Shown here piece by piece: positions 8,213 to 57,830 of a stretch of 64,000 nucleotides of DNA. The translations under genes were made by a program, and so were the position numbers. The stretch lies in IMG/VR virus record IMGVR_UViG_3300020154_000003, positions 1 through 64,000 of that record, one strand, 5' to 3'. Below the pieces are notes generated by a model, which saw nothing but the letters and a program-made list of their open reading frames with translations, ran no database searches and was not told where the DNA came from. Each line of letters begins with the position of its first letter. Positions within the stretch are counted from its first letter, which is position 1.

Positions 8213-8818
8213 CTATGAAAATAAGAAAACAACAATACTACGCTTTAATAAGCCAAATTCGGGGAATAATTTATAGAACTTTTGGTATTCTGTAGAATCG
8301 TCCAGTAGGTGATTTTTGGACTTAGATACCATTACATTAATGATGTCATCCACATGATGACCTAAATATTCGTAGATAGATAATTTTAACCCACATATAA
8401 CATGGCCCTTGCGATAATATAGTATATCCTTTTTATAAACATACAAATCACCATTGGGTTTGAAGAAGTTATGAAGTTGTTCAACTGTGTATAGGTTGTG
8501 GAAAAATGGGTCGATATTAACATATTTGTATTTAGATATATAATACTCAGGAATCCTTTTTACAAAGTTTTCCAGTCCCTGCGAGTACTGAACAATATCC
8601 TCTTCCGGGGAAAACTCCCAATACCTTTGATTGACCATATTTTTGGTCAAAATATCAGCTTCGCCACCAGTATTTGTACTTTTGAAGTAATTCCAACCGA
8701 CAATTAAGGTGGGTAACTGGTTTCTAACCTCAGAAACGTCCTTGTAGTAATTAAGGAACTCAACTTCTTTATGATTTATCAGCCGTTCGGGAGAAACAAC
8801 GTTACCTATCTTGATCAT
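8213..8818 (-). CDS. Hypothetical protein, last gene of the glycosylation operon
   Basis: 201-aa ORF whose start overlaps the wecB stop codon by 1 nt. Confidence 0.6.
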   Translation of the reverse strand: MIKIGNVVSPERLINHKEVEFLNYYKDVSEVRNQLPTLIVGWNYFKSTNTGGEADILTKNMVNQRYWEFSPEEDIVQYSQGLENFVKRIPEYYISKYKYVNIDPFFHNLYTVEQLHNFFKPNGDLYVYKKDILYYRKGHVICGLKLSIYEYLGHHVDDIINVMVSKSKNHLLDDSTEYQKFYKLFPEFGLLKRSIVVFLFS

Positions 8819-9837
8819 TAAACTATTTTTGTCTTTTCCAGTATTTTAACAATTTTTTTAGCGGAAAATCCATCGCCAAAGGGACAAATACTATCCTTGA
8901 CCTCAAAATCGATCATCGTTTCCTTAATTAAGGATTCAAGATGTGCTGGTGAGGGGCATAAGGTACTGGTTTGACCCAAAGCTTCTGGCCTTTCCGTCTC
9001 TTTTCGACAAACTATGGTCTTTTTCTGAAAAAATGACGATTCTTCCTGCAATCCACCACTATCAGTCACGACAAATTTACATTTTACTAGAATATTAAGC
9101 AAATCTTCATGATTTAATGGTGGAATCACCTTCACATGAGTCAAAATATCACGATGCTTCATGACATTAGGGTTTGGATGGATCGGTAGAATAAATTCAT
9201 AGTCAGGATATGCTGCTGCGATCCTATTTATCTGTTCAAACCACACATCAATTGAATCGTGGTTCTCGCGCCTATGTAACGTAACCAGTACTTTGTTTGT
9301 ATATTCACACAAATCTTTAAAAGGTAATAAATTATCAAGCACCGTATTCCCCACAATCCATTTTTCACCTCCCACCTGCTCAGATACTAAATTCAGTTCA
9401 TTACTAGGCGTTGGACACAAATGAATGGAGGCTATTTTAGAAATCATCAACCTGTTTGCTTCCTCAGGGAAAGGGTTTTGAAGATCGAATGTGCGCAATC
9501 CAGCTTCAAGGTGAATTACTTTAATTCCGTTGTGAAACGCAGCCAAGGCGACACCTAAAGCAGATGTGGTATCCCCTTGTACCATCACATATTTGTAATC
9601 AAAGTCCTGAAACAATTTAGATGCAGCCACCATTACCGATGACAACACGTTAGTCAAGCGATCAACACGATGAGTTGGTGGTATGTGTAATGAAACATCC
9701 GCACGAACAACATTCAATAAATCCCTATGTTGACCAGTAAATAATGTCTCAAACAAAAATTTTTGATTTACTAATTCATCAATAACAGGCTTAACTTTCA
9801 ACCACTCCGGTCTAGTCCCAAACGCAATGAGAAGCAT
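8818..9837 (-). CDS. wecB: UDP-N-acetylglucosamine 2-epimerase (non-hydrolysing)
   Basis: GTRPE, TGQH, VQGDT, HLEAGLRT, PEEANR, TLHRREN, TDSGGLQEE, RPE, PFGDG motifs. Confidence 0.95.
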   Translation of the reverse strand: MLLIAFGTRPEWLKVKPVIDELVNQKFLFETLFTGQHRDLLNVVRADVSLHIPPTHRVDRLTNVLSSVMVAASKLFQDFDYKYVMVQGDTTSALGVALAAFHNGIKVIHLEAGLRTFDLQNPFPEEANRLMISKIASIHLCPTPSNELNLVSEQVGGEKWIVGNTVLDNLLPFKDLCEYTNKVLVTLHRRENHDSIDVWFEQINRIAAAYPDYEFILPIHPNPNVMKHRDILTHVKVIPPLNHEDLLNILVKCKFVVTDSGGLQEESSFFQKKTIVCRKETERPEALGQTSTLCPSPAHLESLIKETMIDFEVKDSICPFGDGFSAKKIVKILEKTKIV

Positions 9838-10319
9838 TATTCTTTTATAAATTTACCTTTATATGTTTCAATTATGTCACTACATATCCCCACTAAGGAT
9901 TCATTGAGAAAAGCATTATGTAGCTTATCGAAAGTCACGTTCTCGCTTTCAGGCAACACTGCAATACTATTTGCTACCGCACGATTGCCCGGATAAACCC
10001 AAACAAATCCTTTTGAAGTTATTGTATACCAATCCGTATTGTGCCAAAAATAATGGAATCGCTCACCGTTATTAACTAAGTAATTCAATGCCTCCTTATT
10101 TTTTGCGTGAATCCAGAAATGTGAATTAGATAAAAATTCAGGTGAGACTTCATATGTCGGTTCATCATGTCCTAAATAAGGCTTGTCCTTATGCAACCAC
10201 AAATCAATTTCAACATCATAACCTGCCATCAAAGCAGTTACGATATAGTTTGGGGAATTCTCCCAACCACTTTTCCCATTAATATTCCCGCGATGTGAAA
10301 TATATTTAAATTGTTCCAT
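9837..10319 (-). CDS. GDPD/PLC-like phosphodiesterase-fold protein
   Basis: SHRGN, EN(S)P, GYDVEIDLW, LGHD and WIHAKN motifs; short (160 aa). Confidence 0.7.
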   Translation of the reverse strand: MEQFKYISHRGNINGKSGWENSPNYIVTALMAGYDVEIDLWLHKDKPYLGHDEPTYEVSPEFLSNSHFWIHAKNKEALNYLVNNGERFHYFWHNTDWYTITSKGFVWVYPGNRAVANSIAVLPESENVTFDKLHNAFLNESLVGICSDIIETYKGKFIKE

Positions 10320-10650
10320 CTACCACATATTTATCATCTTGTACAGATGGGAGTTTAATCGCAACAATAGCTGCATCAGTTATTGCGCGGAACTCGATTA
10401 TTTCATTTTGAAAAACTTCAATAATATCACCCTCTCCAAAGATTTTATCATTCATTTGCACCTGTCCTGACACCACCACAGTATATTCTTTCGCTATCTT
10501 ATGATAATGTGCGTTATCGACATCGCCCTTCTGATAGTATTTTACAGCAATCTCAAAATCCTTACTATTAACCAGCACCGGATTAAAATTTCCCATGAAC
10601 CAGCCATTAGTAAAGTTTTTCAATTGATGTTTTAGCATATTATTTAACAA
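10306..10650 (-). CDS. Cupin-fold protein (sugar isomerase/epimerase-like)
   Basis: HYHKIAKEYTVVVSG cupin motif 1, followed by GDIIEV. Confidence 0.75.
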   Translation of the reverse strand: MLNNMLKHQLKNFTNGWFMGNFNPVLVNSKDFEIAVKYYQKGDVDNAHYHKIAKEYTVVVSGQVQMNDKIFGEGDIIEVFQNEIIEFRAITDAAIVAIKLPSVQDDKYVVDGTI

Positions 10651-10659
10651 ATATACAAT

Positions 10660-11403
10660 TTAATCTAATATTTTAGAGTGTTTTAAAAAATAGTCAAGGT
10701 CTTCGGGTACACCAATACCCCACATCTTTTTAACATCATAAACCGATATTTTATGATTTTCGGGAATAGCTTCATTATATACTGGTGCCACGTAAAATTC
10801 TCCGTTTACACGAATGTTTTTGTTGATCATTTGCTCCGCATATTTGACATAATCTCTTCCCTCTCTCCAAACATATATTCCAACCGTTGCAACTGTCGAT
10901 ATAGGTTCTTTTTCAGCAACCCTTTTTACAAGACCTTCATCGTTCAACTCCACAAAACTCCATTTAGGATGGGTCGATTCAAACGTTAGTACTACACCAC
11001 TTAATTTATTTGACTCGTCAAACTGTATTTCTAAGTAATTAAGGAACTTCGTTGAGTTATATTGAATAATTTGATCTGAATTGGCAATGATTAATGGTCG
11101 ATCATTATTAATATACTCTTTCGCAAGTAATGTTGTACAAGCTGCACCCTCAGTCAGTGAATCTACTACAACTATTGAGCATCCCGGCTTAATTAAATTC
11201 AAAACCATATCCAACTTATATTTTTCATGATGTTCTTTTTGAACTATAAAAACATAGTCACCATTAATAGATATGTTTTCAACAACAACCTGAATCATTG
11301 GCTTATTATTGATCGGTATTAATGGTTTGGGAAAAGTATAACCAGCATTGGCGAACCGTGAGCCTGCGCCAGCCATTGGGATGAGAATAATAGGTTTTTT
11401 CAT
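10660..11403 (-). CDS. Sugar-phosphate nucleotidyltransferase (GT2_BcE-like / NTP_transferase)
   Basis: IPMAGAGSRF, PKPLI, EGAACT, NSDQ, AEKEPIS, GEFYVAP, GVPEDL. Confidence 0.85.
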   Translation of the reverse strand: MKKPIILIPMAGAGSRFANAGYTFPKPLIPINNKPMIQVVVENISINGDYVFIVQKEHHEKYKLDMVLNLIKPGCSIVVVDSLTEGAACTTLLAKEYINNDRPLIIANSDQIIQYNSTKFLNYLEIQFDESNKLSGVVLTFESTHPKWSFVELNDEGLVKRVAEKEPISTVATVGIYVWREGRDYVKYAEQMINKNIRVNGEFYVAPVYNEAIPENHKISVYDVKKMWGIGVPEDLDYFLKHSKILD

Positions 11404-12044
11404 CTATAAAATCCCTTTGATGCTTGAATGTAATCCAAACGGAATTTTATTGGTTCGTAACGAATTTCACTACTATCTTTTACCTCATACAAATATGCTC
11501 CTGATTTTTTGGCAGCATCGATACCATATTTTGAATCTTCAAAAATCATTGTTTCAAGTGCATCACAACGACCTATTTCCATAGCCAATTCAAACATCTC
11601 AGGATCAGGTTTAGGGTGAATTACATTTTCATTTGAAAGATAATGATCTACATAATCCATCAAACCAGTCTTTTCAAGTGCTGCGCGAATAGTTGCATGT
11701 ATTGAATTTGATGCCACCATTATTTGATACCCATCTTCTTTCAATTTGCGTAATGCTTCGTTAACGTGTTCATCAGGTAATAGAGTGTCCTCAATTACTT
11801 GTGCTGTAATTGCTTGCTTACGATCCCAAACACGTTCATGTTCACTGAGTGGCAACCCTCTTTCCTCTGTAAGCATGTATAATTTTTGTTTTGTTGGAAG
11901 TCCATCATATCTACTTTCATGGTCTTCACGGTTGATGATGAATTTAGGATCAACTTCACCCAATGCCCGATTAAGTGCTTCATAGTGTACGTCCTTCAAT
12001 TCAATCAACGTACCATCCATATCAAATATTAATAATTTTATCAT
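11400..12044 (-). CDS. HAD-family phosphatase (beta-PGM/Gph-like)
   Basis: FDMDGTL (motif I), VASNS (II), KPDP (III), FEDS..G (IV). Confidence 0.9.
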   Translation of the reverse strand: MIKLLIFDMDGTLIELKDVHYEALNRALGEVDPKFIINREDHESRYDGLPTKQKLYMLTEERGLPLSEHERVWDRKQAITAQVIEDTLLPDEHVNEALRKLKEDGYQIMVASNSIHATIRAALEKTGLMDYVDHYLSNENVIHPKPDPEMFELAMEIGRCDALETMIFEDSKYGIDAAKKSGAYLYEVKDSSEIRYEPIKFRLDYIQASKGFYR

Positions 12045-12058
12045 TTGGTTAAATTTAA

Positions 12059-12784
12059 CTAACTATTAGTCCCTCTTGTATAAGGGTTAATTCCATATTT
12101 TTTAAACAATTCCTTCAACTCATTAGAATATTCATCAGTATTCCACTTACCCTTTACTACGGCAGTTGCTATATAGGGATATATCGAACTATCAAAATGA
12201 CTAGTACCCTTTCGTGAAGAGCCACCATCATCAATATAGTAACCGAAGATTTTTCTTTCTATACAAACTCGTTTTGCGTCAACCTCAAACTCCCATACGT
12301 TCCTACCTTTAGAATTATCATATACTTCTCTAAGTTTTTCAAAATTCCAGATTGTCGGTTGTATTGCGAACACACAATCAAACTTATTGGTGATTATTTT
12401 TAATTCAGGATAAGTCGCATCAGATAAGCCAAACGTAATCCCTCCTTTAATCAGTTTAACAAAATACTTATCCTCAATATTTGCTTTTAAATATTCAGTA
12501 AATACTTTAAGCTTATCATGGTTTGGAGTATCATACAAAAACATATCTTCATGTTGGAAAATACAATAATCGACAGTATTAATCTTTTTCAATGCTGATG
12601 ACATCCTTTCTCTATATGTGAGTTTATCATCATATAAAATAACTTCATAATTGATGGGAATACCAGCGACCCATTTATCTACTATGATGTAATGTTTATC
12701 CTCAGGGAAATACTTATTCATCTGACCAAAATATAATGGCCAAATGTCTTTGTAATCGCTATGAGTATAAACTATGAAATTCAT
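12059..12784 (-). CDS. Putative GT-A fold glycosyltransferase
   Basis: Cluster context; YCIFQHEDMFL acidic metal-binding-type motif; QPTIW and WEFE motifs. Confidence 0.55.
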   Translation of the reverse strand: MNFIVYTHSDYKDIWPLYFGQMNKYFPEDKHYIIVDKWVAGIPINYEVILYDDKLTYRERMSSALKKINTVDYCIFQHEDMFLYDTPNHDKLKVFTEYLKANIEDKYFVKLIKGGITFGLSDATYPELKIITNKFDCVFAIQPTIWNFEKLREVYDNSKGRNVWEFEVDAKRVCIERKIFGYYIDDGGSSRKGTSHFDSSIYPYIATAVVKGKWNTDEYSNELKELFKKYGINPYTRGTNS

Positions 12785-13440: not shown

Positions 13441-14180
13441 TAAATAACTGGTTTACTTTTAGTTAAATACTCATTGAAGGCTTTTGTTACTTCCTGATCT
13501 TCATAGAAATAGTGTCTACCAATACCAACTTTTCTATTTGCATCAGGTATTCGAGATTTCGATCTATGAACTTTAAATAGTAGATACTCTAAAGACAATC
13601 CTTTATAGTGTAATAATTTTAATCCACCATAAGCAGTAGCTTTCACATTCCCCTTGGGATCAGAATAGTGACATCCCATACCATAATCGATTTCATCTAA
13701 ATCGTCAGGGGAGAATATTACTTGCTTATCCATCATTTCAAATTTGCATCCGTTTTTTACTCGCTCAGTTAGCTGCAAATCTGGTTTAAATTCAGGAAAC
13801 ACGTTGCTATACATATTATATCCTTCTGGTTTGAAGATTGTTATTCCTGCCTTCTTTTTTTCATCCAAAAATTGATGAATATTCTCGTGGTATAAGAATT
13901 CATCCAAATCACAAACAATCACATAATCCACGTTCTGATTTTTAGAATCTTTCCATGCATTATTTTTTATTTTTGTGAACACAAGATCATCTTGTTTGTT
14001 ATTCGACTCATATTGTCTGATTTCATGATCTACACCAGAATTTTTGATGATCTCAATACTACTATCAGTGCTAAAATTGTCGTAGAAAAAGAACTTTGAT
14101 ACGAAAGTTCTGTAGTGATTTATAAAAAACGGAAGTAAATCTTCCTCGTTATAAAGAATTGTATATAGATGTATTTTCAT
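13440..14180 (-). CDS. Glycosyltransferase, GT2/GT92-like
   Basis: YNEEDLLPFFINHY, YDNFSTD, IVCDLDEFL (DxD), LLHY. Confidence 0.8.
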   Translation of the reverse strand: MKIHLYTILYNEEDLLPFFINHYRTFVSKFFFYDNFSTDSSIEIIKNSGVDHEIRQYESNNKQDDLVFTKIKNNAWKDSKNQNVDYVIVCDLDEFLYHENIHQFLDEKKKAGITIFKPEGYNMYSNVFPEFKPDLQLTERVKNGCKFEMMDKQVIFSPDDLDEIDYGMGCHYSDPKGNVKATAYGGLKLLHYKGLSLEYLLFKVHRSKSRIPDANRKVGIGRHYFYEDQEVTKAFNEYLTKSKPVI

Positions 14181-14986
14181 TAAACAAATTTTGATTTTTC
14201 ATATAATCCAACTCTCATAAAAAACCATTTATGATATAGATGATTGTTAATTATCTGCCAAGTAGGATATTTTATTAAGTTGGTTGTTTTTGTTGGTTGA
14301 AAAAATTCATTACTAAATTCATCGTTTGCATTACTGTCGGGCCAACCATTAATTAATGCCTTGTGGTATTCACTCCCAATTTTGAAGTCATGCATAGCAT
14401 GTTCTTGCATCATGATGAGAATATTCATATTTTTTGAATTAGAATAAAACCATTGATCAGCATACCCTGCATTCAATTGTGCCCACATTGAAGAATAAAT
14501 GTACTGCATATCGGCCTCAGGCATAAAATTCATTAAAGAAACATTATATCCTCTGTGCAAACCACTTCTATGTCCCAAATCAAAACGAGCAGTGACAACC
14601 ACATCATATTCAAAATCATATTCCAATTCGTGAGTATATTTAAATATGATTGACGCACCTCTACTGGTATAAAAGCTTAATGACGATTGGATAGTACAAT
14701 CTTTGAAGATTGTTTCTGATCTGTTGAAATCTTTATCAATATCACTTTGAGACAACCCCCTTTTTTTAGCTAAAGCTTCGAAGTCAGCTTGTTTATCGAA
14801 AACAGCAAATTTTGGATTATAAAGACCTCTAATTTTATCTTCATTCTCCAAATCCCATGAATGTATAAAGACATCAACGTTAGGATATTTAAGTATATTA
14901 TCCTTAATGTAATTATACCCCTTCATTCCAGCATTAGAATCTCCCTTATTGTTGAAGTACCCGTACAAACAAAGTGCTATTTTCAT
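14180..14986 (-). CDS. Uncharacterised glycosyltransferase-like protein
   Basis: IALCLYG, DVFIHSWD, YDVVVTARFDL and DQWFY motifs, of the kind seen in phage and giant-virus glyco-cluster proteins; cluster context. Confidence 0.5.
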   Translation of the reverse strand: MKIALCLYGYFNNKGDSNAGMKGYNYIKDNILKYPNVDVFIHSWDLENEDKIRGLYNPKFAVFDKQADFEALAKKRGLSQSDIDKDFNRSETIFKDCTIQSSLSFYTSRGASIIFKYTHELEYDFEYDVVVTARFDLGHRSGLHRGYNVSLMNFMPEADMQYIYSSMWAQLNAGYADQWFYSNSKNMNILIMMQEHAMHDFKIGSEYHKALINGWPDSNANDEFSNEFFQPTKTTNLIKYPTWQIINNHLYHKWFFMRVGLYEKSKFV

Positions 14987-15621
14987 ATTGTTCTATATTT
15001 TTTAAAAACATCAAATTCAGTCAAGTCTCTATATCCCAATCCATCATTTTCCCCAAGATCGGGCATAGACGCAGGGTAATTAAGCATTAACGTCAATCCC
15101 CTTGCAGCTTCTTCAGGAGTCATATAGAAATTATAACCAGTTAATTTGATATTATCTTCCATGTAATTCTTTTCAGAGCGTCCTTCATATCTCATCTGCT
15201 TGAACCATTCAATTGCATTCGGATCATCGAATAGTATAGCACCACCCTTACCGATTGGTAATTGTTTCTTTATGTGGAATGAGAGACACATCATTGATCC
15301 GGGGATATACATGTCTGAGGTAAGCCGCTTTGCACTATCGTAAATCGGATATGGATCAAGTCTATACAATCCACTCCATTCCATATCTTTAAAAACAGGT
15401 ATACCACCAGACAAAATCACAGCTTGCGCTACAGATAGATATGTGCGCTTAGGTACAATAACGTCCTTTCCTTGCACTTTATGATAAAGTAATGAGAGTA
15501 AGAGTGCGTTAGTACAACTATCTACTACAACACAATATGGTGCCCCTGTATACTCGCACAGTTCTTCCTCAAACATTTGATTAACTTTGAAAGGATTATG
15601 TTTTATACTTTTAAGTGACAT
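14983..15621 (-). CDS. DegT/DnrJ/EryC1/StrS PLP-dependent sugar aminotransferase (short form)
   Basis: SCTNAL, YDSA (PLP Asp), SFHIKK..IGKGG (catalytic Lys), GYNFYM; only 212 aa. Confidence 0.85.
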   Translation of the reverse strand: MSLKSIKHNPFKVNQMFEEELCEYTGAPYCVVVDSCTNALLLSLLYHKVQGKDVIVPKRTYLSVAQAVILSGGIPVFKDMEWSGLYRLDPYPIYDSAKRLTSDMYIPGSMMCLSFHIKKQLPIGKGGAILFDDPNAIEWFKQMRYEGRSEKNYMEDNIKLTGYNFYMTPEEAARGLTLMLNYPASMPDLGENDGLGYRDLTEFDVFKKYRTI

Positions 15622-19282: not shown

Positions 19283-22198
19283 TTAAGGTTTAATGGCTTC
19301 AGTGTTAGCATTTGACTGACCACCTGTTTGAGATGAATCAGTTATTTTTGATCCATTATTGGCTTCTATTTGTGCGGATTCAGCGATTCTAGCAGTCTTG
19401 TAAACACCAACAGGATAATATGTCGAATTTGCGTAGTAGTTGAAACTTTCAGCATTCTGTAGAACATCAATGGCAGACTTCAACGATTGTCCACCAATTA
19501 CACGCATAGTAATGCTTATGTCAGCAATCATAAACTGCATACCCATGCCTTCAGGATTCATGTCCCAAGGAGCGTCAGTATAATCAAAATCAATACTATC
19601 AATGATCACCTTCGTGTGAAAGAAATCACCAATTCTCAACACGCATACTGGTGGTCTTCCGAATACTGAATTACGAGCAGCAGGAATACCCTGACTTTCG
19701 GTCGAATCCAATACTGTTGCGTTACCCTGACGTGTACACTGTTGTAAGAATGTTAATCTTCTATGAAAATCTTCGGGTGTCTGCGAATGAAATACTGGTG
19801 ACAGTGTGCGTTTTTCTGCAGCTTCGAATCCAGTATATTCTTTATCGTTAACATTTTTCAAAACAAACAACCCATCGTTGTTTTGGAAGTTTTCAGCTTC
19901 AGCAATTAATCTCTTATTTGCTTCAATCTGTTCAAGAATTTTATTTCTATCGTTTTTCTGTTGTTCAGTTAATTCAACCTCCTTATATCTAACCGCTCCG
20001 TTTCTAACCAGTACTACCTTTGCATTTCTCTCTGGTTTAACATCCGATGCATACGCAAATTCTGCTTGCGCACCTCTGTCTGAACCATTGGTTGAACCTG
20101 ATGCAACTTTAATTACTTTCACACCAGCTTCTTCCAGCGTTTTACCATGTTCAGTTTTAAACTTTGTTTGAATATATTCATACAACGCCTCAACCCTTCT
20201 TCTTGATAAATCTAAATTATATTGATACTGTTTTGTTTTATCCACATATAGTTTCGATGCAGAACCAACAAAATTTAATGTTACTAAGTCCAATTCACCA
20301 GTATTTGGGTTAAGTACTGATTGAACGAAGTCAGTCACTGTAGAATCGAAACCAACATTTAATCCATCATCGTTGGGTTCGTTACCATCGTCAGTACCGT
20401 TTTCATACGAGCCATCAGGATCAACAACATCCACGTCATTAGGGAAATAATACGTAACATATGTTCCAGATTTAATTACTGGTGTCTGTTGAATTTTATT
20501 TGGTGTAATGGTCTGTAATTGTGCCTCAAGCCTAGAATTTTCAACTTTCTTAGCTTCAATGTCAACGTTCTTCAACTCAGAAGCACTTAATCTACCACCG
20601 AAAGCAAAAAATTTAGCAGCCTCATTATGGCTTCTACCTCTAATCTGTGGTGGATAATCGATAATTAATTTAAATCCTAATCTTGCTATACGCTCTGATG
20701 AACTATATGTATATATAGGTTCACCTCTACCGATGAAGGTTGTAGTTTCATGCTTCGCAATCGAACTTTCACTTAATTGGATGCCGTAAGGAGGAAACCA
20801 CATCACTCTCCCCATATTTTCACCTACTTCGCTCAACGGAACTTTTGTTCCGAAGGCATCACCCAAATATCCTTTGCTGTTTAATCTAAATGCAAGGTTT
20901 TCGATACTAAACATCATGTTCCTGTTGTCGATAACATTTTTCTCTTTATCGAAAATTGGATGCATCTTAGGAATCACATATCTATTTATCACCGATTCTT
21001 TAGGCCCATCATAAATGTTGTTACCATTAAATCTGATCGCTTTTTTATAATTGTTGTAAGGGTCGATAATATTTTGCTGTCTTTCAGTACGAACGTTACC
21101 ATCATTGTCTCTTGTAAGTGGCGAACCATTGTACATAGGATTTCCGTCCTTGTCATACCACTTCTTTTTCGTCTGGTCGATAGATGAGTTACCACCTCTG
21201 GCTTGCATCAAGGCTCTGGTATAAGCCAGCATACCCGTTCTAATGCCGAATTTAGAGGCCATCGTATTTGCACCGTCTCTACCCCAAACAACCTGACCAT
21301 TGACGTTATCCACGCCAAAGCCATAGCTATTATCAACAAAGTCAAAATCTTTGTCCTTAGGTTGATTTGGTAAGTTCTGAGCAGTGTTTCCAACGTAGTT
21401 GGTAGTCTTACCCAACCTACTTTTGTGATTTGCACTACCATATTCAAGATTGTTCTGGCCTTCGATACTTTTAAGATCGGGTATTTGATATTCATCAACC
21501 ACCGTCATAGATGCCTCAAACCCGTTAGGGAAATTTTCAGGGTCATCAGTAGGAAATAATACACGCTCATACCATTCACGGCCAGCAGGGATTATTGACA
21601 AACCTTGACCGTTGGTTGTAGATATAAATGCACTATCACTAGGCTTATATAGGTTTTTATTTAAACTTTCATAAAGAAAATTCAACACCCCTTTACCTGT
21701 GTTTCTCACCAACTCGTTACGCATCATTCGGAATTCTTCGTTGGTTCTGGTTGGGCTTAATGGTGAGGTCACTCGTTGATTACCAGCAATTCTTTCAATG
21801 ATATTTTCAACTGTGGTATTATCCTCATCACGAGTAATACGATAATCTACACGTTTTGTAAATAATTTTGTATTTGGATTACCATCAAAAAGATTGTTGA
21901 AATTTATAGATGGTAAACCAGCAGTAAGGGCGTTTTGTGTCACTCTTTGAGCAAATTGCTTACCTAATTGCTCGATTCCGATCTGTGCAATAGGTGTATT
22001 TGGCCCAATCATCCTACCGATAACCGTATTTTTAAGGTCAAAAGACTTGGTTGGGTTGAAAACAGCAGAAATTCCGTTAATAGCCTTAATTAATAACGGG
22101 TTGTCAATCGCATAAGGATCATTTGGAGTGTATAAGTTTCTGGCTACCAAATTTTCCCTTAAATTTTTTAATTCTTGGCTGTCTTTTAATCCGGGCAT
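19283..22198 (-). CDS. Large baseplate / tube-initiator-like virion protein with an OmpA-like domain
   Basis: Tube-like segments (FIGRGEPIYTY; GRPPVCVLRIGDFFHTKVIIDSIDFDY) flank an OmpA_C-like stretch; late motif at 22215-22222. Confidence 0.6.
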   Translation of the reverse strand: MPGLKDSQELKNLRENLVARNLYTPNDPYAIDNPLLIKAINGISAVFNPTKSFDLKNTVIGRMIGPNTPIAQIGIEQLGKQFAQRVTQNALTAGLPSINFNNLFDGNPNTKLFTKRVDYRITRDEDNTTVENIIERIAGNQRVTSPLSPTRTNEEFRMMRNELVRNTGKGVLNFLYESLNKNLYKPSDSAFISTTNGQGLSIIPAGREWYERVLFPTDDPENFPNGFEASMTVVDEYQIPDLKSIEGQNNLEYGSANHKSRLGKTTNYVGNTAQNLPNQPKDKDFDFVDNSYGFGVDNVNGQVVWGRDGANTMASKFGIRTGMLAYTRALMQARGGNSSIDQTKKKWYDKDGNPMYNGSPLTRDNDGNVRTERQQNIIDPYNNYKKAIRFNGNNIYDGPKESVINRYVIPKMHPIFDKEKNVIDNRNMMFSIENLAFRLNSKGYLGDAFGTKVPLSEVGENMGRVMWFPPYGIQLSESSIAKHETTTFIGRGEPIYTYSSSERIARLGFKLIIDYPPQIRGRSHNEAAKFFAFGGRLSASELKNVDIEAKKVENSRLEAQLQTITPNKIQQTPVIKSGTYVTYYFPNDVDVVDPDGSYENGTDDGNEPNDDGLNVGFDSTVTDFVQSVLNPNTGELDLVTLNFVGSASKLYVDKTKQYQYNLDLSRRRVEALYEYIQTKFKTEHGKTLEEAGVKVIKVASGSTNGSDRGAQAEFAYASDVKPERNAKVVLVRNGAVRYKEVELTEQQKNDRNKILEQIEANKRLIAEAENFQNNDGLFVLKNVNDKEYTGFEAAEKRTLSPVFHSQTPEDFHRRLTFLQQCTRQGNATVLDSTESQGIPAARNSVFGRPPVCVLRIGDFFHTKVIIDSIDFDYTDAPWDMNPEGMGMQFMIADISITMRVIGGQSLKSAIDVLQNAESFNYYANSTYYPVGVYKTARIAESAQIEANNGSKITDSSQTGGQSNANTEAIKP

Positions 22199-23046: not shown

Positions 23047-23332
23047 AAAAATATTTCGAAAGGTATTATTATCTGAAAAATTACCTCCTTTAGATAAATA
23101 TGTTCCCATGATTGATGATCATGATGAAATTATTATGTATAGAAGAATTGAAGTCCCTATACTTGGAAGTAGTAATATGTCAACTTTTTATAATATGCGA
23201 GATTTGGCAGGGGATAATACTCCACATGATAACCATCCGATGATTTATTGGCTTGAAGAAGTAACTATTGATGAGTTACTTACAACTTCCTCGCGGCTGA
23301 AGTACCTTGTTGATGTCTTACGGACTGAATAA
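23003..23332 (+). CDS. Hypothetical protein
   Basis: 109-aa ORF overlapping rnhA and the 3' end of the tape measure gene. Confidence 0.5.
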   Translation: MKNLRNDMEQNLSTEKIFRKVLLSEKLPPLDKYVPMIDDHDEIIMYRRIEVPILGSSNMSTFYNMRDLAGDNTPHDNHPMIYWLEEVTIDELLTTSSRLKYLVDVLRTE

Positions 23333-25793
23333 CTGCTTCCCTACCAATATCGAGAACCTTAACCAATCTTTCACGGTTAATCTCAAGAGTAATATCACTC
23401 TTAATTGAAACATTTTTATCCGCAAACTCAACTTGCAGAGGTTTGCTTAATAATGATTTTAACTCAGCGAACATGCTGTTGGAATCGATCTTAGTATTTG
23501 CAATATTTTTTATTGCACTTTCCACTTTTTCAAATTGTCCTGCATTAGCATTAAGAACGACACCGATGTTTTTGAAAGCATCGCCAACCCTTTCAATATT
23601 TTTAGCTTGTGTTCCGATTGCAAGTATCATTGCTAACGCACCTCCACCACCGATAGCACCTAAAATTCCACCAGCAGCTAATGACATTGTGGCAGCACCA
23701 ATCGCAGCAATACCTCCTGCAATTCCAAGTAATTGTTCACCACTTGTAGACTTCGAAAGATCGGCTAACCCTTTCGACATATATCCGATACCAGCACCAG
23801 CGATACCGATAGCAACGCCAATACCTAAGAGAGCACCAGTTATGATTGCAATACCGACCACAGATGTTTCTGCAGCCTTACCTAAAAGTACCAAGCTTAC
23901 AGCCATTAATGGTACTGCAATGCTAATTCCTATTATGGAAAATTTAAGTGCATCTAATTGTTCGGGATTTAAGTCCTTCAAGCTTTTCGCTAAAAATCCA
24001 AACCCTGCTGCGGCAGCACCAATTCCAATACCTGCACCAGCAGCAGCTAAACCAATTGCTTTAAGATTACCAGCCATTGCGCTACCGCCTTTACCAGCAA
24101 CTTTTTGCATACCTCCACCCATGAGACCGCCACCACCTGCAGGAGATGGTGAACTACCTCCTTTTGATTTAAGCATCCCACCGATACCACTCATCATCGG
24201 GCCAACGGTGTTGAATAACTTACCAGCAGCAAGTAAAGTGATCGCTGCACCACCGATGCCTTTGATCCAGCCTTCACCCATCCAATCCTTTAACTTATTG
24301 ATCTTTTGTAGAACCCAATTAACTCCCTCCAGTACAGGAAGAAGAACAGATTTCATTTCGAGCATAGTATTTTTCATCACTTCCTCGAAATTCTGTGAGT
24401 CAATACCTCTTTGTTCTAAAGTTTTTTGTTCTTGCTTTAAAAGTTTAATATCGGACGTAGCTAACTTTGAAATGTCTTTTTGCGCACCATTAACCATCGC
24501 AAAGAACTTACCAGTCTTACTATCGAATTTTGCAATACCTTCGATGTACTCTTGCTCATCCTTAGTTAAGTTCAAACCTAAAGTTTGCTTTTTCATGGCC
24601 TGAACCTGTGCGACTCTACGGGCAGATTCTGCTAAATTTTCATATGACACTCCGAGAGCATCAGCAGCCTGACGTAATCTGTCCTGATCCTGTGCAGTTA
24701 CTGCGAAATCGAATCCGTCTTCAGTTTTACGCATCGTAGCCATACCCTTTGTTAGTTGGGTCAACTTCTTAGCATATTCTGCAGGATCATTTCTTGAAAG
24801 GAATAGTAATTCAAATGGGTCTGACTTTGCAAACTCACCACCTAACACATTTAATTGTGAAGCCATCTCAATAGCACCTTCCAAGCTTCTGGCCATCTTT
24901 GCACTATTGATCGAATCATTAATATCTAGCTTGAATTTCTCTGAGTATTCACTCATTTTAGCCATACCTTTAATACCATCTCTGAAAGAGAACGTGTTAA
25001 GGGTTTTGAAGTTCTGACTTATATTTTTTAATACTTTGGTTGCATTAATACCTAGTCGCTCTGATGAGTCAACAACTCCTTGTACAAATTTTTGACTTCT
25101 TTCAATACTGACACCTAAATTATCAAATTGTCCAACAAGTTTTCCAGCTTGATCAACACCTAAGGCTGTACCCTTTCCAATACTTGAAACTAACTTGAAT
25201 TCTTTCTCAGAAAGTGCTACTGTTCTACTTGTTTCTTCTGAATATGCTGCTTGAGCCTTTGCTAATTCAGCAATAGAAACACCCAATCTTTGAGAATACG
25301 TTGCAGCATTCTGCATGTTTTGTCTTAAGTCGTCTGCCTTACCTGCTGACAACCCTAATTCAAGCGTTACACCTCTGATTGCTTTATCGGCATCCATGAT
25401 GTAACCAGTCATCGCACCAAAACCAAAGTTTCTATCTCCAAAACTGGCAATGGAGTTCTTTATATCTCCAACGACTTTTTCTTGTTTTCTATAAGTTTTT
25501 AGTTGGTTTTCTAGTTGCTTATCAAGACCTTTTGCAGCAATGATTTGCTGTTTTAGATTAGCTAAAGCAGTTTGAGATAGTTTACCCCTACCGCTAACGT
25601 GTCGATTTAATCTATTCTCTAACTTTTCAAGTTCTCTGGCGACTGATAGTCTTTCAAGTTCAGTATTGGCAATATTTTTCTGGAAACTACTCTCAAAGCC
25701 TAAGCTTTCGTTAATCTCCTTCATTATCCGTGCCTTTTCCTCCAACGCATTAGTTGATAGTGGAGTGCCTGAAACTTTTTGCTTTTTAGCCAT
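23280..25793 (-). CDS. Tail tape measure protein
   Basis: 837 aa, helical/coiled-coil, Gly/Ala-rich hydrophobic C-terminal half, downstream of tail chaperone genes, late motif at 25809-25816. Confidence 0.85.
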   Translation of the reverse strand: MAKKQKVSGTPLSTNALEEKARIMKEINESLGFESSFQKNIANTELERLSVARELEKLENRLNRHVSGRGKLSQTALANLKQQIIAAKGLDKQLENQLKTYRKQEKVVGDIKNSIASFGDRNFGFGAMTGYIMDADKAIRGVTLELGLSAGKADDLRQNMQNAATYSQRLGVSIAELAKAQAAYSEETSRTVALSEKEFKLVSSIGKGTALGVDQAGKLVGQFDNLGVSIERSQKFVQGVVDSSERLGINATKVLKNISQNFKTLNTFSFRDGIKGMAKMSEYSEKFKLDINDSINSAKMARSLEGAIEMASQLNVLGGEFAKSDPFELLFLSRNDPAEYAKKLTQLTKGMATMRKTEDGFDFAVTAQDQDRLRQAADALGVSYENLAESARRVAQVQAMKKQTLGLNLTKDEQEYIEGIAKFDSKTGKFFAMVNGAQKDISKLATSDIKLLKQEQKTLEQRGIDSQNFEEVMKNTMLEMKSVLLPVLEGVNWVLQKINKLKDWMGEGWIKGIGGAAITLLAAGKLFNTVGPMMSGIGGMLKSKGGSSPSPAGGGGLMGGGMQKVAGKGGSAMAGNLKAIGLAAAGAGIGIGAAAAGFGFLAKSLKDLNPEQLDALKFSIIGISIAVPLMAVSLVLLGKAAETSVVGIAIITGALLGIGVAIGIAGAGIGYMSKGLADLSKSTSGEQLLGIAGGIAAIGAATMSLAAGGILGAIGGGGALAMILAIGTQAKNIERVGDAFKNIGVVLNANAGQFEKVESAIKNIANTKIDSNSMFAELKSLLSKPLQVEFADKNVSIKSDITLEINRERLVKVLDIGREAVIQSVRHQQGTSAARKL

Positions 25794-57146: not shown

Positions 57147-57830
57147 ATGTCACATTATCATTCTGCACGTATCGGTAGAAGCAACAGTACCTACAATAGC
57201 GAATTCATGACCAAAGTTTATGGTTGGATGACGTTCGCTTTGTTTATCACGGGCTTCGTTTCAATTTTTGTGTCAGCAACACCCGTGATCATGAATACTC
57301 TCATTGAGAATACATGGTTATTTTATGGTCTCTTGATTGGAGAAATTATTCTTGTAATTTATCTTGCTGCCAGCATTGATGATCTTTCATATGAAAGTGC
57401 ATTCATGCTATTTTTCATATACTCAGCATTGAATGGTGTTACGTTATCGATAGTTTTTCTGATCTATACTGCAGAATCAGTTGCAACGACTTTCTTCATT
57501 ACGGGAGGGACGTTCGGGGCAATGTCGCTATGGGGTTTGACCACAAAACAAGATTTAAGTTCGTGGGGTAATATTCTATTTATGGGTCTGATAGGACTGA
57601 TAATTGCTGGTGTGGCAAACGTCTTTATTGGTAGCGAAACCTTTCAATATGTAATCTCATTCATTGGTGTAATCGTGTTCGTAGCTTTGACTGCATATGA
57701 TACCCAAAAGATAAAAAATCTAAGTCATAATGGAGATTCTAAAGACGCTCTAATGGGTGCGCTGACATTGTACTTGGACTTCATCAATTTATTCCTTTAT
57801 TTGTTGAGGTTTTTAGGAAATAAAAAATAA
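57147..57830 (+). CDS. Bax inhibitor-1 / YccA family membrane protein
   Basis: Seven hydrophobic segments, FMTKVYGWM, TAYDTQKIK, ALTLYLDFINLF. Confidence 0.92.
   Translation: MSHYHSARIGRSNSTYNSEFMTKVYGWMTFALFITGFVSIFVSATPVIMNTLIENTWLFYGLLIGEIILVIYLAASIDDLSYESAFMLFFIYSALNGVTLSIVFLIYTAESVATTFFITGGTFGAMSLWGLTTKQDLSSWGNILFMGLIGLIIAGVANVFIGSETFQYVISFIGVIVFVALTAYDTQKIKNLSHNGDSKDALMGALTLYLDFINLFLYLLRFLGNKK

What the first reader, a model, noticed from the sequence alone, without database searches (positions are those of the whole stretch)
9837..12044. Four-gene module (HAD + BcbE-like nucleotidyltransferase + cupin + GDPD-like) for an unknown activated donor
Seen: four overlapping or abutting genes whose folds suggest isomerisation, dephosphorylation, nucleotidylation and phosphodiester chemistry. 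From memory, and to be verified: similar nucleotidyltransferases (GT2_BcE-like) occur in capsule loci such as Pasteurella bcb and E. coli K4 kfo, which have been linked to fructofuranose decoration. Inference: the module makes an unusual NDP-sugar or NDP-polyol, and the GDPD-like protein may act as a transferase rather than a hydrolase.
Basis: inference. Interest (0 to 1): 0.6.

Follow-up and report, generated by a model that had tools for sequence, protein, structure and literature searches.

The report
Nucleotidyltransferase plus mini-phosphodiesterase sugar cassette
Four tightly packed genes in a 366-kb phage form a sugar-activation cassette whose constant core, a nucleotidyltransferase paired with an undescribed miniature phosphodiesterase, recurs in glycan gene islands of marine bacteria (SAR11, Prochlorococcus) and in cyanophages, so it probably makes a surface-sugar decoration that has not been characterised.

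Summary
At 9837-12044, on the minus strand, four translationally coupled genes encode:
- a HAD-IA hydrolase (H);
- an RmlA-fold sugar-phosphate nucleotidyltransferase (N);
- a 110-aa metal cupin (C);
- a 160-aa protein (G) that is a stripped-down glycerophosphodiester-phosphodiesterase (GDPD) barrel with the HR..EN..ExD..HD motif but no Pfam match.

The window is the start of a 366-kb jumbo phage.

The genes are a real module. Of 145 G-containing loci with called ORFs, 126 also carry N and 88 carry H. In 75 of those 88, H and N are fused into one protein. C occurs in 39, and all four genes occur in 14 of the 149 fetched loci. Related jumbo phages keep the order H-N-C-G-WecB.

N+G is the invariant core. 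H, a RuBisCO-like protein, and a PfkB kinase (usually with a KdsC-like phosphatase) are almost mutually exclusive alternatives that appear to feed N.

G is also found fused to putative glycosyltransferases, methyltransferases, the cupin, N, and a 2H-type cyclic-phosphodiesterase-like domain.

My best reading: N makes an NDP-linked sugar phosphate, and G displaces NMP from it, either by phospho-sugar transfer or by cyclic-phosphate formation. The product is unknown.

The link to BcbE and fructose could not be tested here. I found no published description of the pairing.

The parts
11400..12044 (-). H: HAD-IA (capped) hydrolase, 214 aa, with the DxD nucleophile motif (D8, D10). It may be a sugar phosphatase, a phosphomutase or a pyrophosphatase. 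In most other loci it is fused N-terminally to N.
   Evidence: PF13419 E 8.7e-30. The NCBIfam beta-PGM-family subfamily scores 87.8 bits, below its cut-off of 153. Best PDB matches are the TM_1254 sugar phosphatase and beta-PGM. H-N fusion proteins: 77, in 75 loci.
10660..11403 (-). N: RmlA/GalU-fold sugar-phosphate nucleotidyltransferase, 247 aa. It keeps GxGxR, K26, D110 and E164-K165.
   Evidence: PF00483 E 7.8e-14. No NCBIfam equivalog is reached; the best, rmlA_long, scores 62 bits against a cut-off of 320. Best PDB match is 4evw, E 1.9e-15. Conserved residues come from alignment A3. It is about 60% identical to the C-terminal half of cyanophage H-N fusion proteins.
10306..10638 (-). C: 110-aa single-domain metal cupin with H44-x-H46-x4-E51-x6-G58. 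It is probably a sugar(-phosphate) isomerase or epimerase.
   Evidence: Alignment A2. The profile finds quercetinase cupins, the small Thermococcus phosphomannose isomerase 7zvm and KdgF in the PDB. AlphaFold pLDDT 95.7. Foldseek hits are cupins, including 7zvm/7zvy, KdgF and the CapF cupin domain. The ATG start at 10638 follows the gene on record.
9837..10319 (-). G: 160-aa 'mini-GDPD', a stripped-down GDPD-type barrel. Invariant residues are H9 R10 G11 N12, E20 N21, E37 D39, H51 D52, H71 K73, H93, T101 S102, W107, C146 D148. By sequence position, the GDPD E-x-K motif is H-x-K here (placement of that motif from memory).
   Evidence: Alignment A1. Profile against the PDB: 3i10 E 4.7e-4. AlphaFold pLDDT 95.8, pTM 0.90. 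Foldseek finds GDPDs with query-normalised TM (TMq) up to 0.58. No Pfam or NCBIfam hit. The family has 2,994 clusters at 50% identity.
8818..9837 (-). Neighbour: WecB-type non-hydrolysing UDP-GlcNAc 2-epimerase. It is translationally coupled to G (TAATG) and sits in the same place in related jumbo phages.
   Evidence: PF02350 E 8e-72. TIGR00236 scores 244 bits, above its cut-off of 210. Synteny in L153-L155.
12059..12784 (-). Neighbour: 241-aa protein of unknown family directly upstream of H. Homologues lie beside the module in a few other loci.
   Evidence: No Pfam, NCBIfam or PHROG hit. Homologues occur in 6 other loci, for example L046, L082 and L097.
14180..14986 (-). Neighbour: 268-aa protein weakly related to the DUF7796 family. 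DUF7796-like proteins lie beside G in 47 loci and are fused to G in at least one representative (P0197); they may be transferases.
   Evidence: Weak BLAST link to a member of the ~220-aa DUF7796-related group: 29.5% identity, E 4e-5. PF25072 hits for other members of that group and for the C-terminal part of the G fusion P0197. No Pfam hit for this protein itself.

Best explanation
The four genes are a cytoplasmic cassette that builds and then processes a nucleotide-activated sugar phosphate for a glycan decoration, within the phage's long glycosylation operon.

Shown:
- N and G form an invariant gene pair across phages, bacteria and archaea.
- H is usually fused to N.
- H, a RuBisCO-like enolase-type protein, and a PfkB kinase (usually with a KdsC-like phosphatase) are almost mutually exclusive partners of N.
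- C follows N in most loci that have it.

Inferred:
1. C interconverts a ketose phosphate and an aldose phosphate.
2. H places the phosphate where N needs it. It does this either as a beta-PGM-type mutase or as a phosphatase acting on a bisphosphate. This would be the job that kinase plus phosphatase do in the ADP-heptose pathway and in the phage arabinose pathway.
3. N couples the sugar phosphate to an NMP, giving an NDP-sugar.
4. G uses GDPD/PI-PLC-type metal-assisted acid-base chemistry to attack the sugar-proximal phosphorus of that NDP-sugar and expel NMP. The nucleophile is either an acceptor hydroxyl, which would leave a phosphodiester-linked sugar phosphate on a glycan, or the sugar's own neighbouring hydroxyl, which would give a cyclic phosphate that is then opened or used.

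The identity of the sugar and the final acceptor (host envelope or virion) are unknown.
For: Coupled operon.

Co-occurrence:
- N lies within 3 kb of G in 64 of 80 IMG/VR loci, 5 of 5 isolate-phage loci and 54 of 64 cellular loci. In loci with at least 5 kb of flank on both sides, N is present in 45 of 49 viral and 31 of 31 cellular loci.
- All 17 isolate-phage records with G are among the records that have N.

Fusions:
- 77 H-N fusion proteins and one 1091-aa N-G-H-N ORF (HAD and one NTP_transferase domain seen by Pfam, the other segments by BLAST to the window proteins).
- Cupin-G and G-RLP fusions (for G-RLP, RuBisCO_large_N by Pfam).
- G-GT61, G-WavE and methyltransferase-G. G-DUF7796.
- G fused to a domain with two HxT motifs, as in 2H cyclic phosphodiesterases. 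The Pfam hit for this domain is weak, E 1e-3.

Feeder enzymes are mutually exclusive: H in 88 loci and RLP or PfkB in 28, with an overlap of 1; Fisher p 1e-17, but the loci are not independent.

The PfkB + KdsC-like HAD + N + cupin variant has the same logic as the heptose pathway and the phage arabinose pathway (PMC13326640).

N keeps the RmlA-type phosphate-binding E-K pair and GxGxR. G keeps the catalytic His, Arg and two of the GDPD metal ligands (E37, D39). Related jumbo phages keep H-N-C-G-WecB.
Against: - No enzyme of the G family or of this N subfamily has been characterised, so every catalytic step is inferred.
- H does not keep the beta-PGM distal-phosphate residues, and it scores about as well against HAD pyrophosphatases such as PpaX and BT2127. 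It could simply pull the N reaction forward by removing pyrophosphate.
- No GDPD-family enzyme is known (from memory) to act on a pyrophosphate or to act as a transferase.
- C is absent from about 73% of loci, so it is not essential.
- The 2H-like domain was seen in only three proteins, and its Pfam hit is below threshold.
- A fold test of N with G gave no verdict.
Confidence: 0.5

Rival explanations
1. An ordinary GDP-mannose-type supply line. C would be a mini phosphomannose isomerase, H a phosphomannomutase and N a mannose-1-phosphate guanylyltransferase, feeding the GDP-mannose 4,6-dehydratases nearby. G would be an accessory or unrelated hydrolase.
For: - C resembles the 104-113-aa Thermococcus phosphomannose isomerases.
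- N followed by C mirrors bifunctional ManC, which is NTP_transferase plus cupin (established knowledge).
- GDP-mannose 4,6-dehydratase lies within 6 kb of G in 55 of 145 loci.
- N weakly matches mannose-1-phosphate guanylyltransferases in the PDB, E 6e-5.
Against: - This does not explain why G, not C, is the constant partner of N.
- It does not explain the RuBisCO-like, PfkB or KdsC-like alternatives.
- N reaches no curated equivalog.
- H is a HAD-IA protein, not the HAD-IIB or alpha-PGM type used by known phosphomannomutases (established knowledge).
- The window itself has no GDP-mannose dehydratase among its scanned minus-strand ORFs from 1 to 22198.
Confidence: 0.15
2. N would be a BcbE/KfoD-type enzyme and the cassette would make an activated fructofuranose (or other ketose) donor. 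G could move the phosphate from O1 to the anomeric O2 through a 1,2-cyclic phosphate.
For: [quoted passage not shown]
- BcbE-like proteins are about 241 aa with the same fold class (PMC11641403).
- The RuBisCO-like partner lacks K334 and R295. Its profile scores against the 2,3-diketo-5-methylthiopentyl-1-phosphate enolase models are close to its best score. It therefore resembles the RLPs that enolise 2-keto-1-phosphates (established knowledge).
- Some loci carry two N paralogues, and one fusion is N-G-H-N plus a 2H-like domain.
Against: - No BcbE or Kfo sequence could be compared here, so family membership is untested.
- The papers read here describe no GDPD-like gene in the bcb locus.
- The window has only one N.
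- The chemistry is speculative.
Confidence: 0.1
3. G works upstream as a normal GDPD. It would release glycerol-3-phosphate (or another polyol phosphate) from glycerophosphodiesters, and N would then convert that product to a CDP-glycerol-like donor.
For: - This is the canonical GDPD reaction, and G keeps the catalytic motif.
- There is a precedent for a GDPD feeding a nucleotidyltransferase-based decoration: GlpQ with the lic1 phosphocholine pathway in Haemophilus (from memory).
Against: - H, C, the RuBisCO-like protein and the PfkB/KdsC-like pair would have no role.
- Fusions of G to putative glycosyltransferases and methyltransferases point to the transfer end of the pathway.
- By sequence position, the GDPD E-x-K motif (third metal ligand; from memory) is H-x-K in G, and the barrel is about 90 residues shorter than the GDPD chains it matches.
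- N keeps RmlA-type rather than TagD-type features.
Confidence: 0.1
4. The cassette supplies a sugar donor for hypermodification of the phage's own DNA rather than for a surface glycan.
For: - The operon sits beside replication genes: DnaB-like helicase, RecA-like protein and 5'-3' exonuclease.
- A thymidylate-synthase-family gene with a large insertion lies at 59814-60986.
- Phage pathways for arabinosylated cytosines use an isomerase, a kinase-nucleotidyltransferase and a HAD phosphatase (PMC13326640).
Against: - The same cassette sits in chromosomal glycan islands of SAR11, Prochlorococcus, Flavobacteria and archaea, beside GDP-mannose dehydratases, aminotransferases and methyltransferases.
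- The window operon carries WecB, a GNAT, a DegT-like protein and six GT2-type transferases, which is typical of polysaccharide assembly.
- No DNA glycosyltransferase was identified.
Confidence: 0.07

Closest known systems
ADP/GDP-heptose pathway (GmhA isomerase, HldE/HddA kinase, GmhB HAD phosphatase, HldE/HddC nucleotidyltransferase) and the phage arabinose pathway (isomerase, AfhE kinase-nucleotidyltransferase, AfhF HAD phosphatase; PMC13326640)
   Same: Same logic: isomerise a ketose phosphate, put a phosphate on C1, remove the distal phosphate, then add NMP. The module variant KdsC-like HAD + PfkB + N + cupin + G has every one of these roles. N weakly matches HddC.
   Different: The isomerase is a 110-aa cupin, not a SIS-domain protein. 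In the window a single HAD-IA protein stands where kinase plus phosphatase stand elsewhere. No known heptose or arabinose pathway has a GDPD-like enzyme, yet here that enzyme is the invariant partner of N.
Glycerophosphodiester phosphodiesterases (GDPD, PF03009: GlpQ, UgpQ, archaeal GDPDs)
   Same: Barrel fold and the HR..EN..ExD..HD catalytic signature.
   Different: G has 160 residues, against 217-285 for the GDPD chains it matches. It has no Pfam match. By sequence position the E-x-K motif is H-x-K (motif placement from memory). The N-terminus carries the catalytic motif straight away, with no obvious leader sequence. G is embedded in sugar-nucleotide operons and fused to transferases, which suggests a biosynthetic role rather than scavenging.
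Donor-synthase plus phosphotransferase pairs for phosphodiester decorations (LicC+LicD, TarI/J+TarL, TagD+TagF and the TagF-like/GT fusion capsule polymerases)
   Same: A nucleotidyltransferase is genetically locked to the enzyme that uses its product with release of NMP. The G-GT61, G-WavE and G-DUF7796 fusions resemble TagF-like/GT fusions (the comparison is from established knowledge).
   Different: G has a different fold from LicD, TagF and Stealth transferases, and no transferase activity has been shown for any GDPD. This is a functional analogy only.
BcbE/KfoD-type capsule proteins (IPR016873) linked to fructose side chains
   Same: Similar size (about 241-247 aa) and fold class. Genetic evidence ties BcbE to the addition of an unusual sugar.
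   Different: Sequence relationship is untested. The papers read here report no mini-GDPD partner in those loci.

Membership tests
GDPD (PF03009) | Profile match above Pfam's gathering score | tested here: not met
   No Pfam or NCBIfam hit at E<=0.01. Only a family profile reaches GDPD chains in the PDB, at E 4.7e-4.
GDPD (PF03009) | Catalytic signature HR..EN..ExD..HD | tested here: met
   H9-R10, E20-N21, E37-x-D39 and H51-D52 are invariant in 34 family members and align to the same motifs of 3i10 and 7e0v.
GDPD (PF03009) | Full-size (beta/alpha)8 barrel of about 220-250 residues, with Glu as third metal ligand in an E-x-K motif | tested here: not met
   The 160-aa model has eight short strands and six helices. 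Foldseek TM is up to 0.58 normalised by the query but about 0.40 normalised by the target. The position is H71-x-K73 (placement of the motif is from memory of GDPD structures).
Sugar-1-phosphate nucleotidyltransferase (PF00483, RmlA/GalU fold) | Profile match above cut-off, plus GxGxR, catalytic Lys/Asp and the E-K phosphate-binding pair | tested here: met
   52.3 bits against a cut-off of 21.2. G12-x-G14-x-R16, K26, D110 and E164-K165 are conserved in A3.
RmlA, GalU, GlmU, HddC or MurU equivalogs (NCBIfam) | Score above the curated equivalog cut-off | tested here: not met
   The best is rmlA_long, 62 bits against a cut-off of 320. All 17 hits are far below their cut-offs.
BcbE-like capsule protein (IPR016873 / CDD GT2_BcE_like) | Sequence membership in the family model | not testable with these tools
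   No InterPro or CDD model and no BcbE/KfoD sequence were available. The best PDB relative, 4evw, is an unannotated structural-genomics entry. Text searches gave only the family's name and size.
HAD superfamily, subfamily IA | DxD nucleophile motif and HAD_2/Hydrolase profiles above cut-off | tested here: met
   D8-M-D10. PF13419 scores 104.6 bits and PF00702 92.5 bits. TIGR01509 HAD-SF-IA-v3 scores 45 bits against a cut-off of 29.4.
Beta-phosphoglucomutase (TIGR01990) | Equivalog score and the distal-phosphate residues (K45, R49, K117, N118 of the L. lactis enzyme) | tested here: not met
   69.7 bits against a cut-off of 189.4. In the alignment to 1lvh these positions read D, T, I and H, while H20 is kept (residue roles are from memory).
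Cupin superfamily (metal-binding monocupin) | Double-stranded beta-helix fold and motif 1, HxH-x3-4-E-x6-G | tested here: met
   H44-x-H46-x4-E51-x6-G58. Foldseek finds 268 PDB hits at E<=1e-3, and all those listed are cupins. Pfam Cupin_2 scores only 16.7 bits against a cut-off of 27.2. The His of motif 2 is absent.

The most novel reading that the evidence does not exclude
The mini-GDPD may be a new class of glycan-building enzyme that takes the NDP-sugar made by its partner nucleotidyltransferase and expels NMP. It could do this in either of two ways:
- as a phospho-sugar transferase, a fourth fold for this chemistry beside TagF, LicD and Stealth;
- as a cyclase, making a sugar cyclic phosphate that a 2H-type enzyme (or G itself) reopens. 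That would be an NTP-driven way to move a phosphate to a position, such as the anomeric oxygen of a ketose, where direct phosphorylation is rare.

If so, an abundant and unrecognised sugar decoration would exist on SAR11, Prochlorococcus, other marine microbes and their phages.
Probability: 0.25. Interest if true: 0.85.

Novelty: new variant of a known kind. Interest (0 to 1): 0.62.

Why it matters
The G family is large: 2,994 clusters at 50% identity. It has no Pfam model and no characterised member, and it is locked to one nucleotidyltransferase subfamily in the hypervariable glycan islands of some of the most abundant marine microbes and their phages. These islands are thought to set phage-host recognition (from memory). 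An unknown, widely shared decoration pathway there would be a concrete biochemical target.

The interchangeable feeder enzymes (HAD, RuBisCO-like protein, PfkB plus KdsC-like phosphatase, cupin) make a natural experiment in pathway design. The RuBisCO-like member would add a glycan-biosynthetic role to a family otherwise known for sulfur salvage and apiose catabolism.

If G proves to be a transferase or cyclase, it extends the known chemistry of the GDPD fold.

Tried and rejected
- DNA-level search of isolate phages found only partial hits in five Synechococcus phages, so I moved to protein-level searches.
- The word-index protein search for the cupin found only two proteins, which is a limit of the index. 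The family was rebuilt from fetched loci instead.
- Complex prediction for N with G gave no verdict (score 0.00). It counts neither for nor against binding.
- The ESM Atlas look-ups returned only 'hypothetical protein' clusters for G, and DUF7796 for the ~220-aa neighbour family.
- Text searches found no paper describing this cassette, the mini-GDPD, or a RuBisCO-like protein in glycan loci. They also found nothing for GT2_BcE_like, cd04183 or 4EVW beyond one annotation table.
- A BcbE/Kfo sequence comparison was not possible. Those capsule types are unlikely to be in the species-representative genomes, E. coli genomes takes only DNA queries, and I had no reference sequence.
- The 308-aa gene inserted between H and N in related jumbo phages has no PDB relative.
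- I considered and set aside three ideas:
  - H as an MtnC-like enolase-phosphatase and C as an acireductone dioxygenase. There is no ARD profile hit, and C is about 70 residues too short (typical ARD length from memory).
  - N as a CMP-ketose synthetase of the KdsB type. N keeps the RmlA-type E-K pair.
  - The RuBisCO-like partner as a true carboxylase. K334 and R295 are replaced.

Full report
**What the window is.** The window is bases 1-64000 of a 366,038-bp virus record rated 100% complete. It encodes:
- a DnaB-like helicase, a RecA-like protein, a 5'-3' exonuclease and RNase H;
- a tail sheath protein, an RlaP nucleotidyltransferase and a thymidylate-synthase-family protein.

It is therefore a jumbo tailed phage, with about 35% G+C throughout. 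From about 22198 down to 1, nearly all genes lie on the minus strand in one long array.

**The observation.** They are translationally coupled:
- N's ATG overlaps H's stop (ATGA).
- G's ATG lies 14 nt inside the end of C.
- The ATG of the downstream WecB-type epimerase overlaps G's stop (TAATG).

Fold assignments:
- H is a HAD-IA hydrolase (PF13419 E 8.7e-30).
- N is an NTP_transferase (PF00483 E 7.8e-14).
- C gives only sub-threshold cupin hits. Its family has the motif HxH-x4-E-x6-G, and its model (pLDDT 95.7) matches only cupins.
- G has no Pfam or NCBIfam hit. It begins ISHRGN and carries E20-N21, E37-x-D39 and H51-D52, all invariant in 34 relatives.
  - A profile of the G family finds GDPD chains in the PDB (3i10 E 4.7e-4; 7e0v E 1.2e-3).
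  - Its model (pLDDT 95.8, pTM 0.90) is matched by Foldseek essentially only to GDPDs (TM up to 0.58 by query, about 0.40 by target).

So 'GDPD-like' is right, but G is a cut-down version. It has 160 residues, against 217-285 in the GDPD chains it matches. By sequence position it has H71-x-K73 where GDPDs have E-x-K (motif placement from memory).

**The rest of the operon.** Upstream lie six GT2-type glycosyltransferase-like genes, a GNAT, a short DegT-like gene and several genes without any family. Downstream lie the WecB-type epimerase (TIGR00236, 244 bits, above its cut-off) and then unknowns, followed by the replication genes.

**Is it a module?** Yes.
- All four proteins belong to PHROG families of unknown function.
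- Among isolate phages, N occurs in 23 records and G in 17. All 17 G records are Synechococcus myoviruses, and all of them are among the N records.
- In these cyanophages the homologues of H and N are one 457-461-aa protein, with H at the N-terminus and N at the C-terminus.
- A pattern scan for G found at least 583 viral contigs and 64 loci in cellular genomes. The cellular loci come from many Pelagibacteraceae (including a complete Pelagibacter chromosome), Prochlorococcus, Flavobacteriaceae, Chitinophagales, CPR bacteria, a Poseidoniales archaeon and others.
- Across the 149 fetched loci, N lies within 3 kb of G in 64 of 80 IMG/VR, 5 of 5 isolate-phage and 54 of 64 cellular loci. Where at least 5 kb of flank is present on both sides, N is present in 45 of 49 viral and 31 of 31 cellular loci.
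- All four genes co-occur in 14 loci, 7 viral and 7 cellular. Examples are a Pontiella MAG (H-N fusion, then C, then G) and an Acholeplasmataceae MAG.
- Contigs of 211-327 kb from related jumbo phages, whose N is 71-72% identical, keep the order H, a 308-aa unknown, N, C, G, WecB (one of them with an extra 158-aa gene after N), followed further downstream by the same RecA-like and exonuclease genes.

**Anatomy of the wider family.** I clustered all ORFs within 6 kb of G. Of the 145 loci where G was recovered as an ORF:

| Component | Loci |
|---|---|
| N | 126 |
| H | 88 (75 as an H-N fusion) |
| GDP-mannose 4,6-dehydratase | 55 |
| DUF7796-like protein | 47 |
| C | 39 |
| RuBisCO-like protein (RLP) | 17 |
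| PfkB-like kinase | 11 |
| KdsC-like HAD-IIIA phosphatase | 9 |

Recurrent gene orders are:
- H-N fusion, then G;
- N-C-RLP-G;
- KdsC-like HAD, PfkB, N, C, G;
- N-RLP-G (in SAR11);
- H-N-C-G, as in the window.

The constant unit is therefore N+G. H on one hand, and RLP or PfkB on the other, almost never occur together: 88 and 28 loci with an overlap of 1 (Fisher p about 1e-17). The loci are related to one another, so this p-value overstates independence. Such exclusivity is what alternative suppliers of the same kind of substrate would show. It argues against H being merely a pyrophosphatase helper.

The RLP keeps K175, K177, K201, D203, E204, H294 and H327 but has N at R295 and Y at K334 (residue roles from established RuBisCO work). 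It is therefore not a carboxylase and has lost part of the distal-phosphate site. It resembles the RLPs that enolise 2-keto-1-phosphates.

**Fusions of G.** A profile search of 1.84 billion representative proteins found 2,994 clusters with G (1,362 at E<=1e-30). I used this costly search because the family scans left G open. About a sixth of the 150 best hits are longer than 300 residues and carry a second domain. The partners found are:
- TylF-like and other SAM-dependent methyltransferases, GT61 and WavE;
- DUF7796, a family the ESM Atlas groups with 'capsular polysaccharide biosynthesis' and 'glycosyltransferase family' clusters;
- the cupin, and the RLP;
- a roughly 230-aa domain with two conserved HxT motifs and a weak hit to the AKAP7 2H-phosphoesterase model (E 1e-3, below threshold).

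One 1091-aa ORF in an Oxalobacteraceae MAG reads N-G-H-N followed by this 2H-like domain.

These fusions place G at the junction between donor synthesis and transfer or tailoring, not in nutrient scavenging. If the 2H-like domain is real, it hints at a cyclic-phosphate intermediate, because 2H enzymes open cyclic phosphates (established knowledge).

**The individual enzymes.**
- N keeps G12-x-G14-x-R16, K26, D110 and E164-K165. These are the RmlA/GalU-type nucleotide and sugar-phosphate binding residues (established knowledge), so N most likely joins an NMP to a phosphate ester. It reaches no curated equivalog; the best is rmlA_long at 62 bits against a cut-off of 320. Its nearest solved relative is an uncharacterised Vibrio protein, 4evw.
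- H is closest to the TM_1254 sugar phosphatase and next to beta-phosphoglucomutases, but it also scores against PpaX and BT2127-type pyrophosphatases. In the alignment to L. lactis beta-PGM it keeps D8, D10 and H20 but not K45, R49, K117 or N118. Sequence alone cannot tell mutase from phosphatase from pyrophosphatase.
- C resembles the very small phosphomannose isomerases of Thermococcus, KdgF, and the cupin domain of CapF. That supports an isomerase or epimerase role on a sugar derivative, but it is not specific.

**Most likely mechanism.** The variant KdsC-like HAD + PfkB + N + cupin has exactly the roles of two known pathways:
- the ADP/GDP-heptose pathway (isomerase, anomeric kinase, distal phosphatase, nucleotidyltransferase; established knowledge);
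- the phage arabinose pathway recently described (isomerase, AfhE kinase-nucleotidyltransferase, AfhF HAD phosphatase; PMC13326640).

By analogy, I propose for the window:
1. C shapes the sugar phosphate.
2. H delivers the phosphate ester that N needs. It does so either as a mutase or by trimming a bisphosphate.
3. N makes an NDP-sugar.
4. G attacks the sugar-proximal phosphorus with release of NMP. It either transfers the sugar phosphate to an acceptor hydroxyl or cyclises it onto the neighbouring hydroxyl.

Steps 1-3 are inferred from family logic, fusion and mutual exclusivity. Step 4 is inferred from GDPD/PI-PLC chemistry and from G's fusions. Nothing here identifies the sugar.

I put about 0.8 on 'functional cassette with an N+G core for a glycan precursor'. 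I put about 0.5 on 'G acts on N's product'. Within that 0.5, I split roughly evenly between transfer and cyclisation.

**Rivals.**
- An ordinary GDP-mannose line (C as isomerase, H as mutase, N as guanylyltransferase) fits the cupin's resemblance to mini phosphomannose isomerases and the frequent GDP-mannose dehydratase neighbours. It leaves unexplained G's constancy and the RLP and PfkB variants.
Membership of N in the BcbE family could not be tested.
- G as an upstream GDPD feeding a CDP-glycerol-type donor ignores the feeder enzymes and the fusions.
- A DNA-hypermodification role fits the phage context but not the many chromosomal glycan-island contexts.

**Known or new.** The Aravind-group survey of jumbo phages notes in general terms that cyanophages carry clusters with cupin isomerases, PfkB kinases, nucleotidyltransferases and glycosyltransferases (PMC7824862). 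I found no paper that describes the mini-GDPD family, its pairing with this nucleotidyltransferase, the H-N fusion, or RuBisCO-like proteins in such loci. GenBank annotations call the parts 'glucose-1-phosphate thymidylyltransferase', 'HAD-superfamily hydrolase', 'hypothetical protein' and, once, 'glycerophosphoryl diester phosphodiesterase'. I rate it a new variant of a known kind: a sugar-activation cassette with a new, uncharacterised enzyme family at its core.

**Limits.**
- All functional statements are computational.
- The loci are not phylogenetically independent.
- Some 'cellular' loci from single-cell or metagenome bins could be phage DNA, although a complete Pelagibacter chromosome also carries the module.
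- The 2H-like assignment is weak.
- The N-G complex test gave no verdict.

Noticed in passing
window 59814-60986 (+): A thymidylate-synthase-family protein of 390 aa, about 125 aa longer than the 266-position Pfam model. The model is matched in two stretches (positions 3-154 and 159-264), the first spread over about 195 residues, so the protein carries extra inserted sequence. It could be an ordinary ThyA or a pyrimidine hydroxymethylase or hydroxylase relevant to DNA modification.
   Followed up: partly
window 14983-15621 (-): The DegT/DnrJ/EryC1-type aminotransferase ORF is only 212 aa, against about 360 for the family. Related jumbo phages also have short versions of 230-257 aa (L153, L155). 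This looks like a lineage feature or a truncated enzyme rather than a sequencing break.
   Followed up: partly
L116:1432-2625, L033:6039-7220, L088:2888-4078 and 14 other loci: RuBisCO-like proteins (form IV type, with K334 replaced by Y and R295 by N) sit between the nucleotidyltransferase/cupin and the mini-GDPD in glycan islands of SAR11, CPR bacteria, Bacteroidota and uncultured phages. This is an unexpected setting for this family.
   Followed up: partly
L134:818-4093 (+): A single 1091-aa ORF in an Oxalobacteraceae MAG reads nucleotidyltransferase, mini-GDPD, HAD, nucleotidyltransferase, then a domain with two HxT motifs (2H-phosphoesterase-like). Nearly the whole pathway is in one polypeptide.
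   Followed up: partly
L004:8037-8504 (S-CAM9, NC_031922 152549-153016) and L005:8037-8498 (S-PRM1): In these GenBank records the mini-GDPD homologue is not annotated as one gene. Its frame overlaps the 3' end of the 'HAD-superfamily hydrolase' and a 95-104-aa 'hypothetical protein', so the start codon is probably annotated too far downstream.
   Followed up: no
window 57147-57830 (+): A full-length Bax1-I/TMBIM-family membrane protein (PF01027, E 2.9e-62) is encoded by the phage.
   Followed up: no
window 19283-22198 (-) and 23280-25793 (-): Two large ORFs (971 and 837 aa) have no credible Pfam or PHROG match. The 971-aa one is the upstream-most ORF of the minus-strand array that holds the glycosyltransferase genes.
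   Followed up: no
L153:7050-7976 and L155:7044-7970: Related jumbo phages carry an extra 308-aa gene between H and N that the window lacks. It has no precomputed Pfam hit on record and no PDB relative. It may be a further feeder enzyme.
   Followed up: partly
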